Positions 7,682 to 11,245 of a stretch of DNA of 64,000 nucleotides are shown here, piece after piece; positions within the stretch are counted from its first letter, which is position 1, and the number at the start of each line of letters is the position of its first letter. The position numbers and the translations under genes are program-made. Origin of the DNA: Octopus sinensis (lineage: Eukaryota); assembly GCF_006345805.1 (NCBI RefSeq), contig NC_043003.1:74524001-74588000 (forward strand), given 5' to 3'. The notes beneath the pieces were generated by a model. The model was given only the letters and a program-made list of their open reading frames with translations. It ran no database searches and was not told the DNA's origin.

Positions 7682-7781
7682 TGTTGTATGGAAGTACAAC
7701 ACTCTTATTTGGCTGGCTCCTAATGGATTGTGTTACAATATAAATAGACATGTGCAGTGAGTAGGTGAGCTGTGTAAAGCC
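7682..7781 (+). repeat. 5' LTR, upstream (U3) piece
   Basis: TGTTGTATGGAAGTACAACACTCTTATTTGG...GTGAGCTGTGTAAAGCC aligns to 14992-15092 TGATGTGTGAAAGTAGAACACCCCTATTTGG...GTGAGCTATGTAAAGCT. Confidence 0.9.
7739..7746 (+). promoter_or_regulatory. TATA box of gypsy LTR
   Basis: TATAAATA within the LTR U3 piece, 28 bp upstream of the 15-bp insertion target. Confidence 0.5.
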
Positions 7782-9428
7782 GCGAATTGTCGTTGTATTT
7801 GAAGGTCGGTCAGAGAGTGTTGGACTTAATTTTTGAGTTCAATGTTGATTGTGAATTTGATTATTACTGAATGCTGAAGGCTTTCCCTGTGCGGGTGTAC
7901 CCGTATATTTCGGTTGTTTTTAATTCAATTGTATAATGGAGAATTTGAATACCTCGAGCCAGAGCTATGCAGCTGCGGTAACAGGTAGCGACAATATTGC
8001 CACGTTAACAGAGACGTACGTAAAGGTAGAAACATACAGAATTAAAGAATGTGAAACATTGTCAACGAATCAATGAACAGCGAACTCTCTGGTCCTGTAT
8101 AAGACTTTAAGATTGTCCACAGGAAAAATCGAAACCACGACGACTGAGAGTATAGCAAAAATGCTCAAAAATATTAAACACCTGACGACTTTTGTAACAA
8201 GAAGTCAGAAGTTCGGAGTGGTAGAAGTCAGGTTCGCATCAGAGGAAGCAGCAGCAGAGCATGCAGTAGACGCGATTAGGAACGACGAATGAGCTTTCTT
8301 ACCGAGTTACTGCGGAAAAAGAATGGCGAGATTAAGGGTGGGTAAAACCCCACCCGAATATAACGAGACATGGATTATGGCGGCAGTCTTATTCCACTTG
8401 ATACAGAGTCCGAAAATATTTAAGGCAACAAGAACGCAAGAGGTGGACGTATGGGCATACGGGCTAGAAATGAAATTTCAAACCACCCTGGAAGACCTGA
8501 ATTCCATAACTGAAGAAATAATATTGCCCGAAGGAAACAAGGTGAATGTGGTAGTAGAGGGCAGACCGTTGAAATGTTTTTTTTTTTGTGTGGCAAAAGA
8601 GGAAACAAAAAAGCGGACAGCCGTCGAAGCAAGGAAAAAGTGAGCGAGGAGAGTTCAACGTAGAGACATGCAACCGTGGAGGAGTGCGAAAAAGAAGCTG
8701 AGAAAATGGATATAGAGGAGGAATTCGCAGAAAAAGTAGAAGAGCTTCTCCACCGGAGAAGCTGAAAAATAAATAAAAAAGGCGATGGGAAGTAATGGAG
8801 ATAAAATAGTGACAAAAATGACAGAAGAAGAAAGTTTGAAAGTGTCTCCTCTGAATATGAGGTTGAAGAGGGGTGAAGAAAAAAGGAATGAAGGAGTAAT
8901 CACGGGTAGAAATACCTAAGGGTTACAGCAAAGATGGAACTAAATCAATAGTAATAGAACCGAATTGATATGAGGAGTTTTAAAAAAAGGTGTGACTTGG
9001 GAAAGGTACAGTTTAAAGTCGAGTTTGAAAAGTTGGAACCAGTAATCAACTGGGGTGACGTGATATCATTAATAAAGGACTGTCTTTTACATAGCTCTCA
9101 ATCAATGGATAGCGAATAATAAGACTTTTAATTAGAAAGTCAATGCTTCAGGAATTCGATGTGGACCGCTGGAGAATATACAGCTTGGCGACTTGCAATG
9201 GTATGTTATATGTTAATTAATTGTGATTTAAATACAGAATAATAATGGACTGTAAATAAGATTAATAGTACTGCATGTGGTGAGATGCGCATACAACCAT
9301 TCATAATTTCATTATTATATAATCATCTCATTCATATTCGTTCTATGTATTGTCTCCTCTTTGGTGTCCTGTCTGTTCTTGTTTGTCCCCCCTATATTTT
9401 GAGCACTTGTGGCTATAATAAAGAAATG
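7782..9428 (+). mobile_element. ORF1-only non-LTR element, unit A (Tx1/L1-like, ~1.65 kb)
   Basis: Bounded by GAGCTGTGTAAAGCC (7767-7781) and GAGCTGTGTAAGGCC (9429-9443); starts GCGA..GTTGTATTTGA; single decayed ORF from ATG 7936; ends TGTCCCC...TGTGG..AATAAAGAAAT; no EN/RT motifs. Confidence 0.8.
7936..8800 (+). pseudogene. L1/Tx1-type ORF1 protein (SYAAAV N-terminus, RRM-like domain, degenerate CCHC knuckle, acidic tail)
   Basis: MENLNTSSQSYAAAV...GVVEVRFASEEAA...LPSYCGKRMARLRVG...VVVEGRPLKCF[T-run frameshift]CGKRGNKKADS (CX2CX4HX4C with H>N and C>S, each one base change); in-frame stops present. Confidence 0.75.
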
Positions 9429-9443
9429 GAGCTGTGTAAGGCC

Positions 9444-11119
9444 GCGAGTAGTTGTATTTGAGTTCTCTCCATGTGAGTTTTGTTGTATTGTATTGTTAAT
9501 TTACTGAAATGTTGAACTGTATTTTGACTGGAATTGTTGGAATTGTTGTTTTATGGCTTTTATTTTACTTCCCAATTTATGGGTGAAGTTATGAATAATA
9601 CTGTTATGGAAAGTAAACCAGCAGGGAGTTACGCTGCGGTGGCCGTCAAATGCCTGTCAATAGATGTACTGCAGTTCCGTCAAATCGAATTAAAGGAGAA
9701 TTTTAAAAAATGTAACAGTTTGCTGAAGAAGGAAGGGGACAACCTGAGGTTGATGACCCCTAAACTAATACTTAAAAAACTGAAAAAGGACAATTATTTA
9801 TAGAACGTTGAATGTGACAACGGAAAATAGTGAAGTAGCAGCGGAGGAAGCGGTAGAGGAATATCGACAAGAGACAAAGATATGACGACATATTACACGA
9901 GGGGAAAAATACTGCACGGTGGAAGTACGCTTCGTAAGCGAAGAAGTAGCAAGGAAATACTCCACTGTGCCTTTAAGATCAGCCGAGTGGGCATTGTTAC
10001 CTACTTACTGTGGCAAACGTGCGGCCAGAGTAATAATCGGTAGAGTGCCCAAGAAATTGAAGTGGTATGGCTGGTGGCAGCCATCCTCTATTACACAGAG
10101 GAAGATTCTGAGGTGTTAAAGATATCGAGAATGACGGAAGTGAACTGATAGGGGTTTGGACTGCAGGTGTCGGTCCATATCAGCCTGCCTGACCTTCACA
10201 AAATTGCGGAAGAGCTGGTGCTACCAGATGAGACAACATTAAGGATCGTCGTAGAAGAAACCTGAACGTCCCCAGAAACCTGAACAGGAGGAGGCAGAGA
10301 AGGCGAGCCAGGAAGAAGAGGGCGCAACTACTGAGGAGGAGGAAATAGTGGAAAATATACAGTGGTAGAAAGAGGAGTAACGTGGAATCTCCACCTAAAA
10401 AGGAAACAAAGGCAGAGGTGAACAAGAACGAGAATAGAAAGACTGAGGAGCTAATTGAGGAACGAACACAAAGACCGTTGCCTTCTACTAGGAAGGAGAA
10501 GGAAGGGCGGAATAAGAAGCGACATGAAAGTGAGAAGGAACGGCGGAAGAAGAAGAGACATGTAAGTGAATACCAGAAACAGAGGAAGAGAGTGGTGAGG
10601 TACAGCACCGAAGGAGTAATATGAAAGAATTGATTCATTACAAAAATAGTGTAGAGATGGAAAAGAAAATTTCAAAAATGAAACATATATTAAGGGTTAA
10701 ACTGGCTGACAGAGAGGAAAACGGAGATGAGAAAGCGGTGCTGTTGGAGGAAGAGAGAACAAGAAGGTTGCAGGAAATATTTGGCGACAGGATAGTGATG
10801 ACAGGAATTCGATTTGGTTACGATGATTTGCCACCAGTGGTAATATTTGATGATTTGACGAAATTTTTGTTGTGACATTGTGTAGATTTTTAAACAAAAG
10901 GAAAACTAACAAAATACAATATTGATAAGTACAAACTTTATTTAAAAAACAGTCAAATGGAAATACCTGCTTTGCGGGTTATGAAAGCCATGTCATTCTC
11001 GTTTCATTTATATTCATAATTCATTCGTTGTATATTTTTATGTACCCCAGTTGTTTTGTTTTGTCTGTCCTTGTGGTGTCCCCTCTCTATAAAGGCCATG
11101 CGTCTAAATAAAAGAAATA
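9444..11119 (+). mobile_element. ORF1-only non-LTR element, unit B (Tx1/L1-like, ~1.68 kb)
   Basis: Bounded by the 15-mers at 9429-9443 and 11120-11134; starts GCGAGTAGTTGTATTTGA; ends TGTCTGTCCTTGTGGTGTCCCC...AATAAAAGAAAT; ORF1 homologous to unit A but strongly diverged. Confidence 0.8.
9591..10860 (+). pseudogene. L1/Tx1-type ORF1 protein, second family
   Basis: MNNTVMESKPAGSYAAV...VEVRFVSEEVA...WALLPTYCGKRAARVIIG...WLVAAIL...IAEELVLPDETTLRIVVE then a Lys/Glu/Arg-rich tail; several frameshifts. Confidence 0.72.
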
Positions 11120-11245
11120 GAGCTGTGTAAAGCCAGGTGTTGTGTATTGTCGTGTGTATTTACAAGTATTGTGTATCTTGAATAGAACGATTTGCGTAGG
11201 CGTTATCGATTATCCCGTTATATCGTACGTCGAACGTGCGATACA
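11120..11245 (+). repeat. 5' LTR, downstream (R/U5) piece
   Basis: GAGCTGTGTAAAGCC...TACAAGTATTGTGTATCTTGA...TTATCCCGTTATATCGTACGTCGAACGTGCGATACA aligns to 15078-15209; followed by a PBS-like motif. Confidence 0.9.

What the first reader, a model, noticed from the sequence alone, without database searches (positions are those of the whole stretch)
7767..11134. Two unrelated ORF1-only retroelements inserted head-to-tail at one exact 15-bp site inside a gypsy LTR
Seen: the layout is 15mer (7767-7781) - unit A (1647 bp) - 15mer (9429-9443) - unit B (1676 bp) - 15mer (11120-11134). Removing A, B and two 15mers restores a 5' LTR colinear with the empty 3' LTR, which has the site once (15078-15092). 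A and B share the 5' start (GCGA..GTTGTATTTGA), the 3' end and ORF1 motifs (SYAA, VEVRF.SEE.A, LP.YCGKR.AR), but are far too diverged to be a local tandem duplication and neither shows EN/RT motifs. Established: Tx1-clade LINEs are often sequence-specific (Xenopus Tx1L inserts into another transposon) and ORF1-only LINE derivatives exist (HAL1, HeT-A). Inference: a family of non-autonomous Tx1-like parasites that specifically targets a Ty3/gypsy LTR, i.e. a transposon-on-transposon system with conserved target specificity across divergent families. I do not know of a description of this combination.
Basis: partly seen in the sequence, partly recalled or inferred. Interest (0 to 1): 0.92.

Follow-up and report, generated by a model that had tools for sequence, protein, structure and literature searches.

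The report
ORF1-only LINEs stacked in gypsy LTR
Two different gag-only (ORF1-only) relatives of an octopus L1/Tx1-type LINE sit head to tail at exactly the same 15-bp spot of a Ty3/gypsy LTR, which shows the site was used twice, but whether these families home to gypsy LTRs in general is only weakly supported.

Summary
The layout is real. The 15-mer occurs at 7767, 9429 (1 mismatch) and 11120. It occurs once, with 2 mismatches, in the empty 3' LTR at 15078. Cutting out A, B and two 15-mers restores an LTR colinear with the 3' LTR.

A and B are not unrelated. Both encode one protein of the same family (about 40% identity): tandem RRM, CCHC knuckle, coiled coil and a C-terminal motif. Both end in the same conserved 3' tail. 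In Octopus sinensis that tail also ends full-length LINEs (ORF1 + APE-RT-zf-RVT) and an abundant SINE that makes a 14-bp target duplication. At least five further octopus families have the same ORF1-only build. So A and B are HAL1/HeT-A-like non-autonomous LINEs, not chance deletions.

Two sequential target-primed insertions into one 15-bp site is the best reading.

Gypsy-LTR specificity at family level is not shown:
- Seven related copies lie elsewhere, including a B-like copy in a Wtap intron.
- One Logan contig has a third ORF1 family just 3' of the same position of a related gypsy LTR, but it is ambiguous.
- An autonomous relative does look target-specific.

Verdict: partly supported, moderately interesting, a new variant of a known kind.

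The parts
7682..7766 (+). 5' LTR of the host Ty3/gypsy element, part upstream of the site (U3-like; TATAAA at 7739)
   Evidence: Aligns to 14992-15077 of the 3' LTR. TATAAA position.
7767..7781 (+). 15-mer copy 1 (target-site duplication; also about where LTR transcription should start, 28-30 nt after the TATA box)
   Evidence: The TSS position is inference.
7782..9428 (+). Unit A, an ORF1-only non-autonomous LINE. 5' UTR 7782-7935. Degenerate ORF1 7936 to about 9116, with 2 stops and a frameshift at the T-run 8575-8586 before the knuckle and many stops after it. 3' UTR 9117-9428, with the conserved tail block 9369-9428.
9429..9443 (+). 15-mer copy 2 (1 mismatch)
9444..11119 (+). Unit B, an ORF1-only non-autonomous LINE of another family. 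5' UTR 9444-9590. Degenerate ORF1 9591-10872, with the zinc knuckle deleted and the C-terminus aligning to the last residue of P0104. 3' UTR 10873-11119, with the conserved tail block 11060-11119.
11120..11134 (+). 15-mer copy 3
11135..11245 (+). Rest of the 5' LTR (U5-like), followed by a TGGTGACGAG primer-binding-like site at 11250
11246..14991 (+). Degenerate internal region of the host element: gag knuckle, RT 12853-13294, RNase H 13455-13856, integrase 14077-14581, purine tract 14979-14991
14992..15209 (+). 3' LTR with the site present once and empty (15078-15092)
50645..50790 (-). SINE copy ending in the same 3' tail as A and B, followed by unrelated flank
32498..32727 (+). Second SINE copy with the same tail, abutting a 5'-truncated SINE

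Best explanation
A and B are old, now broken copies of two diverged families of non-autonomous LINEs. Each keeps only a 5' UTR of about 150 nt, the ORF1 gene and a 3' UTR of about 250-310 nt. ORF1 comprises tandem RRM domains, one CCHC knuckle, a coiled coil or low-complexity stretch and a short conserved C-terminal motif. The 3' UTR ends in a conserved tail block.

They belong to an octopus L1/Tx1-type lineage. Its autonomous members carry the same kind of ORF1, an ORF2 with APE endonuclease, RT and zf-RVT, and the same tail. An abundant SINE has borrowed the same tail.

Lacking ORF2, A and B must have been copied in trans by a partner's ORF2 protein that recognises the tail (inferred). The route is target-primed reverse transcription with staggered nicks 14-15 bp apart.

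The site GAGCTGTGTAAAGCC lies about 28 nt after the LTR's TATA box. It was cut at the same two positions on two separate occasions. The first insertion gave 15mer-X-15mer. The second went into one of the two copies and gave 15mer-A-15mer-B-15mer.

Exact re-use implies a strong preference of the machinery for this sequence (inferred). That preference could come from endonuclease specificity. It could also come from pairing between target-derived ends of the element's RNA and the nicked target. The AATAAA sits only 6-7 nt before the element's end. By the general rule of cleavage 10-30 nt downstream of AAUAAA, transcripts should therefore run into the downstream 15-mer. An LTR-driven transcript would also start in the upstream one.

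Sitting there also puts a promoterless element under the LTR promoter (inferred).
For: Layout and empty site.

ORF1 family: 239 relatives, 48 at E<=1e-10, named Octopus bimaculoides or O. sinensis proteins wherever a source gives a name. Homologues cover A unit positions 155-925 and B unit positions 341-1429, which reaches the C-terminus. zf-CCHC is found in intact homologues. The AlphaFold model has pLDDT above 90 over residues 20-220, and Foldseek matches tandem-RRM proteins (NONO/SFPQ, IMP3, HuC).

Autonomous relatives: in L001 the ORF1 is followed by an APE N-terminus. L006 has ORF1 plus Exo_endo_phos, RVT_1 and zf-RVT. Its RT is nearest to human L1 ORF2p at 4e-42, against R2 at 1e-25.

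Shared tail: the block TTGT.TGTCCC.CTCT.TGT..GCCC.T.GTGGGTAATAAAGAAAT is aligned in A, B, L006 LINEs, SINEs and the L004, L009 and L013 copies. The L002 and L005 copies carry it too.

Size of target duplications: a SINE with this tail has a clean 14-bp TSD. L006 copy c1 has a perfect 17-bp TSD. These fit a 14-15-bp TSD here.

Recurrent ORF1-only build: L002, L003, L004, L005, L009, L013.

Signs of targeting:
- The only two ORF1 copies in 64 kb are at one site.
- The three 15-mers differ from each other by 0-1 base but by 2-3 from the 3' LTR copy, so they are younger than the LTR pair.
- L006 c1 and c2 sit at the same point of two copies of one repeated target.
- L014 has a third ORF1 family starting 137 nt after the equivalent site of a related gypsy LTR.
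Against: - No second A-family or B-family copy with the 15-mer could be fetched.
- The B-like copy in L013 lies in a Wtap intron with TSD AGCTAGCGAGG/AGCTAGCAAAG. It shares only the first four bases with the site if the G next to the tail is counted as element, and it has no LTR similarity.
- The L002, L003, L004, L005 and L009 copies have no 15-mer and no LTR similarity.
- The SINE target GGTTATGATGTTTC is unrelated, so the tail's machinery is not strictly site-specific.
- Head-to-tail junctions without any spacer occur elsewhere (L004). Arrays can therefore also arise in another way.
- A's and B's heads resemble the 5' LTR sequence just after the site (empirical p 0.0005 and 0.007). This hints that the 15-mer plus head may be partly LTR-derived rather than a plain duplication.
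- L014 can also be read as a gypsy carrying the ORF1 gene after its full LTR.
- Trans-mobilisation and RNA-end pairing are untested.
Confidence: 0.6

Rival explanations
1. One insertion event, not two. During a single target-primed reverse transcription the RT jumped from the 5' end of a B RNA to the tail of an A RNA. The middle 15-mer came from the RNA, because the source copies already sat at the same site of other LTR copies (an LTR-started 5' end or a read-through 3' end).
For: Spacer-less tail-to-head junctions exist (L004). The same tail-to-truncated-SINE joint recurs in two unrelated loci. AATAAA lies 6-7 nt before the element end, so read-through into the flank is expected.
Against: It still needs earlier insertions of both families at this very site, so it does not remove site specificity. 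A complete 15-mer, not a partial one, lies between A and B.
Confidence: 0.12
2. Capture during gypsy reverse transcription. RNAs carrying the short R (the 15-mer) at both ends were co-packaged, and strong-stop DNA jumped R to R through B and A before returning to the gypsy RNA.
For: The 15-mer lies where R should be, about 28 nt after the TATA box. A and B heads resemble the U5 start. L014 shows an ORF1 gene fused colinearly into a related gypsy element.
Against: Standard reverse transcription would copy the composite into both LTRs, yet the 3' LTR is empty. The LTR U3 shows no similarity to the element tails. The tail is a proven LINE/SINE tail with TPRT-type duplications.
Confidence: 0.08
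3. No sequence specificity. The spot is a local hotspot (open promoter DNA, recurrent nick) or the hit is a chance double hit.
For: Related copies and the SINE land at unrelated sites. TATA-like motifs lie 28-31 nt upstream of two other copies (L009, L013). In L003 a GATAAGG motif lies about 42 nt upstream.
Against: Both nick positions are re-used to the base on both strands. The only two copies in 64 kb share them.
Confidence: 0.05
4. A and B are randomly internally deleted autonomous LINEs, or a local tandem duplication that diverged.
For: Both lack ORF2 and are degenerate.
Against: The ORF1 C-terminal motif is followed directly by the 3' UTR in A, B and at least five other families. Intact 400-620-aa proteins with the same build exist, and none of the eight scanned against Pfam shows EN or RT. 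A and B share no nucleotide similarity outside head and tail, while the flanking 15-mers are nearly identical.
Confidence: 0.03

Closest known systems
HAL1 (half-L1) of mammals
   Same: A non-autonomous LINE derivative that keeps only ORF1 and arose repeatedly (PMC5753468). Here several diverged ORF1-only families coexist.
   Different: HAL1 has the Type II (Transposase_22) ORF1, a poly(A) end and no known target preference. The octopus elements have a Type I ORF1 (RRM + CCHC), a specific non-poly(A) tail shared with a SINE, and a re-used site.
HeT-A of Drosophila telomeres
   Same: Gag/ORF1-only, dependent on another element's RT, found in head-to-tail arrays, and transcribed from a promoter that lies upstream of the element, giving an LTR-like unit (PMC5537684).
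   Different: HeT-A adds to chromosome ends and belongs to the Jockey clade. Here the insertions are internal with 15-bp duplications, and the upstream promoter would belong to a gypsy LTR.
Target-specific Tx1-clade LINEs (Tx1L in Tx1D, Keno, Kibi, Koshi, Mutsu, Dewa)
   Same: APE-type LINEs with an RRM/CCHC ORF1 that insert at one sequence, often inside another repeat, and pile up in one orientation. Background comes from my own knowledge of Kojima and Fujiwara 2004. Type I ORF1 is consistent with Tx1 (PMC5203782), and L1-Tx1 is ubiquitous in molluscs (PMC10294476).
   Different: Those are autonomous and their specificity is shown by many copies. Here the elements are ORF1-only, the target would be an LTR-retrotransposon LTR, and specificity rests on one locus plus one ambiguous contig. 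Clade membership was not tested.
Stringent LINE/SINE pairs with a common 3' tail
   Same: A conserved tail of about 45 nt is shared by the autonomous LINE, the SINE and the ORF1-only elements. The principle is cited within PMC9115989 (Ohshima and Okada 2005).
   Different: Here a third, protein-coding class of passenger uses the tail. No conserved stem-loop was predicted.

Membership tests
Non-LTR retrotransposon of the L1/Tx1 superfamily (as a non-autonomous derivative) | Flanking target-site duplication of about 10-20 bp made by staggered nicks | tested here: met
   15-mer present three times around two units and once at the empty site. Relatives have 14- and 17-bp duplications.
Non-LTR retrotransposon of the L1/Tx1 superfamily (as a non-autonomous derivative) | Type I ORF1 protein (RRM plus CCHC knuckle) | tested here: met
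   Pfam zf-CCHC in intact homologues. AlphaFold model and Foldseek show tandem RRMs. A keeps a frameshifted knuckle and B has lost it.
Non-LTR retrotransposon of the L1/Tx1 superfamily (as a non-autonomous derivative) | ORF2 with APE endonuclease and reverse transcriptase inside the element | tested here: not met
   ORF1 homology fills B to its C-terminus, and 247-312 nt of 3' UTR follow in both units. The units are therefore non-autonomous.
Non-LTR retrotransposon of the L1/Tx1 superfamily (as a non-autonomous derivative) | Autonomous relatives with the same ORF1 family and the same 3' end | tested here: met
   L006 has ORF1 plus Exo_endo_phos, RVT_1 and zf-RVT, and the tail ...CCCCTTGTGGGTAATAAAGAAAT.
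Tx1 clade proper | RT-domain phylogeny placing the partner within Tx1 rather than L1 | not testable with these tools
   No reference RT set was on hand. The only result is that the nearest solved structure is human L1 ORF2p.
Target-specific LINE | Most copies of one family sit at the same sequence with the same duplication | tested here: inconclusive
   For: A and B, L014, and L006 c1/c2 at one repeated target. Against: L013, L002, L003, L004, L005, L009. No further copy of the A or B family itself could be fetched.
HAL1/HeT-A-like ORF1-only non-autonomous LINE | A recurrent, conserved ORF1-only build rather than one-off deletions | tested here: met
   The same build occurs in at least five other families in O. 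bimaculoides, O. sinensis and a Logan sample. Intact proteins of 404-623 aa exist.
HAL1/HeT-A-like ORF1-only non-autonomous LINE | Mobilisation in trans by a partner's ORF2 protein | not testable with these tools
   Inferred from the shared tail only.
Ty3/gypsy LTR retrotransposon (the host element) | LTR pair, primer-binding and polypurine sites, and pol order RT-RNase H-integrase | tested here: met
   Its own 5-bp duplication is unclear (AGCAC vs AATAC).
LTR-type retroelement (A and B as R-U5...U3-R genomes) | 3' end homologous to LTR U3 | tested here: not met
   No significant U3-tail similarity: after correcting for the 24 comparisons nothing remains, and the lowest single p is 0.044.

The most novel reading that the evidence does not exclude
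Promoterless ORF1-only LINEs of octopus make a living by homing into the transcription-start (R) region of gypsy LTRs. Their RNAs start and end in target-derived sequence. That sequence guides re-insertion at the same LTR position and puts each new copy under an LTR promoter. Now and then they recombine into the gypsy itself, so that a LINE ORF1 stands where gag should be (L014). This would be a living link between LINE ORF1 and LTR-element gag.
Probability: 0.2. Interest if true: 0.75.

Novelty: new variant of a known kind. Interest (0 to 1): 0.5.

Why it matters
If the preference holds genome-wide, this would be a LINE lineage whose chosen target is the promoter end of an LTR retrotransposon. 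It would be a three-layer parasitism: an ORF1-only passenger, the autonomous LINE it borrows, and the gypsy element it lands in. It would also offer a natural system for asking how APE-type LINEs acquire target specificity and how passengers that keep ORF1 are mobilised.

Even without the targeting, the locus documents a class of protein-coding non-autonomous LINEs in cephalopods. They share their tail with the dominant octopus SINE. That is useful for repeat annotation, because many are currently annotated as 'uncharacterized' or 'CCHC-type domain-containing' genes.

Tried and rejected
- Pfam on the A and B translations gave nothing. The word-indexed homologue search with A gave nothing. Only the full HMMER scan found the family.
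- An alignment of window fragments (A1) was useless as a profile.
- Three contig look-ups returned nothing: two UniRef-only proteins and one NCBI-listed protein (P0152).
- Collection scans for 15-mer+GCGA gave only chance bacterial hits: 2 in metagenomes and 1 in genomes. A scan for the tail in viral contigs gave 1 chance hit.
- The idea that the LTR U3 is homologous to the LINE tail was rejected.
- RNAalifold found no conserved structure in the tail.
- Rfam found nothing in the window.
- The bacterial promoter scan is irrelevant for a eukaryote.
- Upstream flanks of L003, L009, L013 and L005 do not resemble this LTR, and no gypsy coding sequence follows those copies.
- The tandem-duplication and random-deletion readings were rejected.
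Full report
**1. Observation**

- GAGCTGTGTAAAGCC lies at 7767-7781 and 11120-11134 (exact), at 9429-9443 (one mismatch) and at 15078-15092 (two mismatches). No other match with up to 2 mismatches exists in 64 kb, and chance expects 0.08.
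- A is 7782-9428 and B is 9444-11119.
- Joining 7682-7781 to 11135-11244 gives a 210-bp LTR. It aligns through the joint to 14992-15205 at 79% identity.
- The sequence between the LTRs carries weak but ordered Pfam hits to RVT_1, RT_RNaseH and rve. It has a purine tract abutting the 3' LTR and a TGG... site just after the 5' LTR. It is therefore a degenerate Ty3/gypsy-type element.
- I read the element only in pieces.

**2. What A and B are**

They are not unrelated.
- At nucleotide level only the first 20 nt or so and the last 30 nt or so match.
- At protein level they share 49% over 53 aa plus 32% over 68 aa.

Pfam and the word-indexed search saw nothing. A full HMMER scan found 239 relatives, 48 of them at E<=1e-10. 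Wherever a source gives a name they are Octopus bimaculoides or O. sinensis 'uncharacterized' or 'CCHC-type domain-containing' proteins.

Intact members of 404-623 aa share one build:
- an N-terminal (S/T)YA motif;
- a conserved core of about 200 aa;
- one CCHC knuckle (Pfam zf-CCHC);
- a long low-complexity or helical stretch;
- a short C-terminal motif.

An AlphaFold model of P0002 has pLDDT above 90 over residues 20-220, with two beta-alpha-beta-beta-alpha-beta units. Foldseek matches tandem-RRM proteins. This is the Type I ORF1p architecture (RRM + CCHC), which the literature ties to plant L1 and to Tx1-like elements of non-mammalian animals (PMC5203782).

Homologues align to A from the start codon (unit position 155) to 925. 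They align to B from 341 to 1429, and 1429 is the last residue of P0104. After that come only 247 nt (B) or 312 nt (A) of 3' UTR. There is no room for ORF2.

Both copies are dead.
- A has two stops and a frameshift before the knuckle and about ten stops after it.
- B has stops and frameshifts and has lost the knuckle.

**3. That the protein is a LINE ORF1, and the partner**
- In contig L001, of unknown organism, the ORF1 homologue is followed after 34 nt by an ORF starting MALLKVGSINVRGL..., an APE endonuclease N-terminus.
- In O. sinensis locus L006 the ORF1 is followed by an ORF2 with Exo_endo_phos, RVT_1 and zf-RVT.
- That RT is nearest to human L1 ORF2p (4e-42) and further from R2 (1e-25).
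- The L006 copies end in ...CCCCTCTATGTTCGCCCCTTGTGGGTAATAAAGAAATCA. This is the same block that ends A and B, the SINE copies in the window (50645-50790 minus strand; 32498-32727) and in L005, and the other ORF1-only copies.
- No consensus stem was predicted in it.

This is the classic shared-tail relation of a stringent LINE with its passengers. Here the passengers include a protein-coding class.

**4. ORF1-only is a class, not an accident**

The same build (5' UTR, ORF1 ending in the C-terminal motif, 3' UTR of about 250 nt, tail) is seen in these copies:
- L002;
- L003 and L004;
- L005;
- L009;
- L013.

These families are mutually very diverged. The closest analogues are HAL1 (PMC5753468) and HeT-A (PMC5537684).

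**5. How the triple 15-mer arose**

Relatives make duplications of the right size.
- The SINE in L005 is flanked by a clean 14-bp GGTTATGATGTTTC.
- L006 copy c1 (7378-12628) is flanked by a perfect 17-bp AACTGAATACTCGTCAT.

The three 15-mers differ from each other by 0-1 base but from the 3' LTR copy by 2-3 bases. The LTRs as a whole are 21% diverged. The duplications are therefore younger than the LTR pair.

A and B are far too different to be a local duplication. A profile scan finds no other copy of the family in the window.

The simplest account is two separate target-primed insertions that used the same two nick positions. That requires a strong preference for this sequence.

**6. Is the preference a family trait?**

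Against:
- None of the seven other ORF1-only copies I could fetch has the 15-mer within 3 mismatches or lies in this LTR.
- The B-like copy in L013 (71% nt identity) sits in a Wtap intron with the duplication AGCTAGCGAGG/AGCTAGCAAAG. That shares only its first four bases with the site (if the G next to the tail is counted as element).
- The SINE target is unrelated.

For:
- The autonomous L006 copies c1 and c2 sit at the same point of two diverged copies of one target of about 75 nt (CTGAACTTTSACCRACTGAATAC). This lineage can therefore be target-specific and build head-to-tail arrays that way.
- Logan contig L014 carries a third ORF1 family downstream of an LTR related to the window's. The alignment has empirical p 0.008, starts at the LTR terminus and covers the TATA box and a site TGTGGTGTTGAAAGCT.
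- In L014 the ORF starts 137 nt after that site, as in A (154 nt) and B (147 nt). Its leader resembles B's 5' UTR (p 0.03) rather than gypsy U5 (p 0.5-0.7). At about 1381 it runs colinearly into gypsy gag-knuckle, protease and RT, matching window 12052-13562.

L014 has two readings:
- the same kind of insertion followed by a deletion;
- a gypsy that has taken up a LINE ORF1.

I could not obtain more copies. Scans gave only chance bacterial or phage hits.

**7. Complications worth keeping**

(a) Spacer-less tail-to-head junctions exist (L004). The same joint of a tail to a 5'-truncated SINE recurs in two unrelated loci. RT template jumping may therefore also build arrays.

(b) The heads of A and B resemble the 5' LTR sequence just after the site. 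For A the match is ATTGTCGT-TGTATTT against ATTGTCGTGTGTATTT, empirical p 0.0005. For B p is 0.007. Neither head resembles the 3' LTR.

(c) Positions of the signals:
- The site lies about 28 nt after the LTR's TATAAA.
- A's tail has TATAAT 30 nt before B's first base.
- AATAAA lies 6-7 nt before each element's end.

Together these suggest, as inference only, that LTR-resident copies are transcribed from the upstream 15-mer into the downstream one. Their RNAs would then carry target sequence at both ends. That could guide precise re-insertion, as read-through rRNA sequence does for R1 (own knowledge).

The rival that A and B were captured during gypsy reverse transcription is disfavoured. The 3' LTR is empty, and the LTR U3 shows no similarity to the tails.

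**8. Comparison and novelty**

These points are known:
- ORF1-only LINE derivatives;
- shared LINE/SINE tails;
- target-specific Tx1-type LINEs that sit in other repeats.

These points are new in kind:
- ORF1-only passengers with a Type I ORF1 in cephalopods;
- possibly an LTR-retrotransposon LTR as the target.

I rate it a new variant of a known kind.
- Interest is about 0.5.
- Confidence in the identity of A and B is about 0.85.
- Confidence in two independent insertions at one site is about 0.7.
- Confidence in true LTR homing as a family trait is about 0.35-0.4.

Noticed in passing
window 5992-6775 (+): An integrase ORF (Pfam rve) of a different gypsy-like element lies about 900 nt upstream of the host element's 5' LTR. 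It is only 43-50% identical in protein to the host's integrase, so the region holds nested or adjacent LTR elements.
   Followed up: partly
L006 (O. sinensis CM016867.1) about 2186-16850: A head-to-tail array of at least three full-length autonomous LINEs, preceded by another element's tail. Copy c1 has a perfect 17-bp duplication, and c1 and c2 sit at the same point of a repeated target of about 75 nt.
   Followed up: partly
L014 (Logan SRR11869391) 368-2832: A chimera: a gypsy-type LTR, then a LINE-type ORF1 gene, then a colinear gypsy gag knuckle, protease and RT. It is either a deletion after an LTR insertion or a gypsy that carries a LINE ORF1 in place of the gag N-terminus.
   Followed up: partly
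window 32727/32728 and L002 6843/6844: The same junction occurs in two unrelated loci: a LINE-type tail ...AAAGAAAT(A/C)G joined to GTATTTCGTCCGTCTTTACGTTCT, the inside of a SINE. In one locus a SINE lies upstream and in the other an ORF1-only element. It may be a composite family or a recurrent template jump.
   Followed up: no
L004 5739/5740: The tail of a 5'-truncated ORF1-only copy abuts the head (TTGAGCGGCAG...) of a second copy with no spacer. The heads in L003, L004 and L009 all start TTGAG(C/A).
   Followed up: partly
L009 about 350-390; L013 5210-5241; L003 about 5384-5426: TATA-like motifs lie 28-31 nt upstream of the element start in L009 and L013, as in the window's LTR (window TATAAA at 7739). 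In L003 a GATAAGG motif lies about 42 nt upstream. This could reflect promoter-proximal landing or a bias towards expressed, annotated copies.
   Followed up: no
L005 4446-4677: A SINE with the shared tail is inserted inside an ORF1-only element, with a clean 14-bp duplication GGTTATGATGTTTC. The annotated gene model splices it out.
   Followed up: yes
proteins P0017, P0055, P0112 (O. bimaculoides gene models): Gene models fuse an ORF1 fragment to what look, by eye, like host-gene-like parts: WD-repeat-like, LDL-receptor-A-like and astacin-like. These are likely annotation artefacts or exonised elements.
   Followed up: no
window 11941-12033: An (AAT)n microsatellite lies inside the gag region of the host gypsy element.
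   Followed up: no
proteins P0007 and P0017; window 10242-10300: A subgroup of the B-like family has lost the CCHC knuckle but keeps the rest of ORF1, in both the window copy and O. bimaculoides proteins.
   Followed up: no
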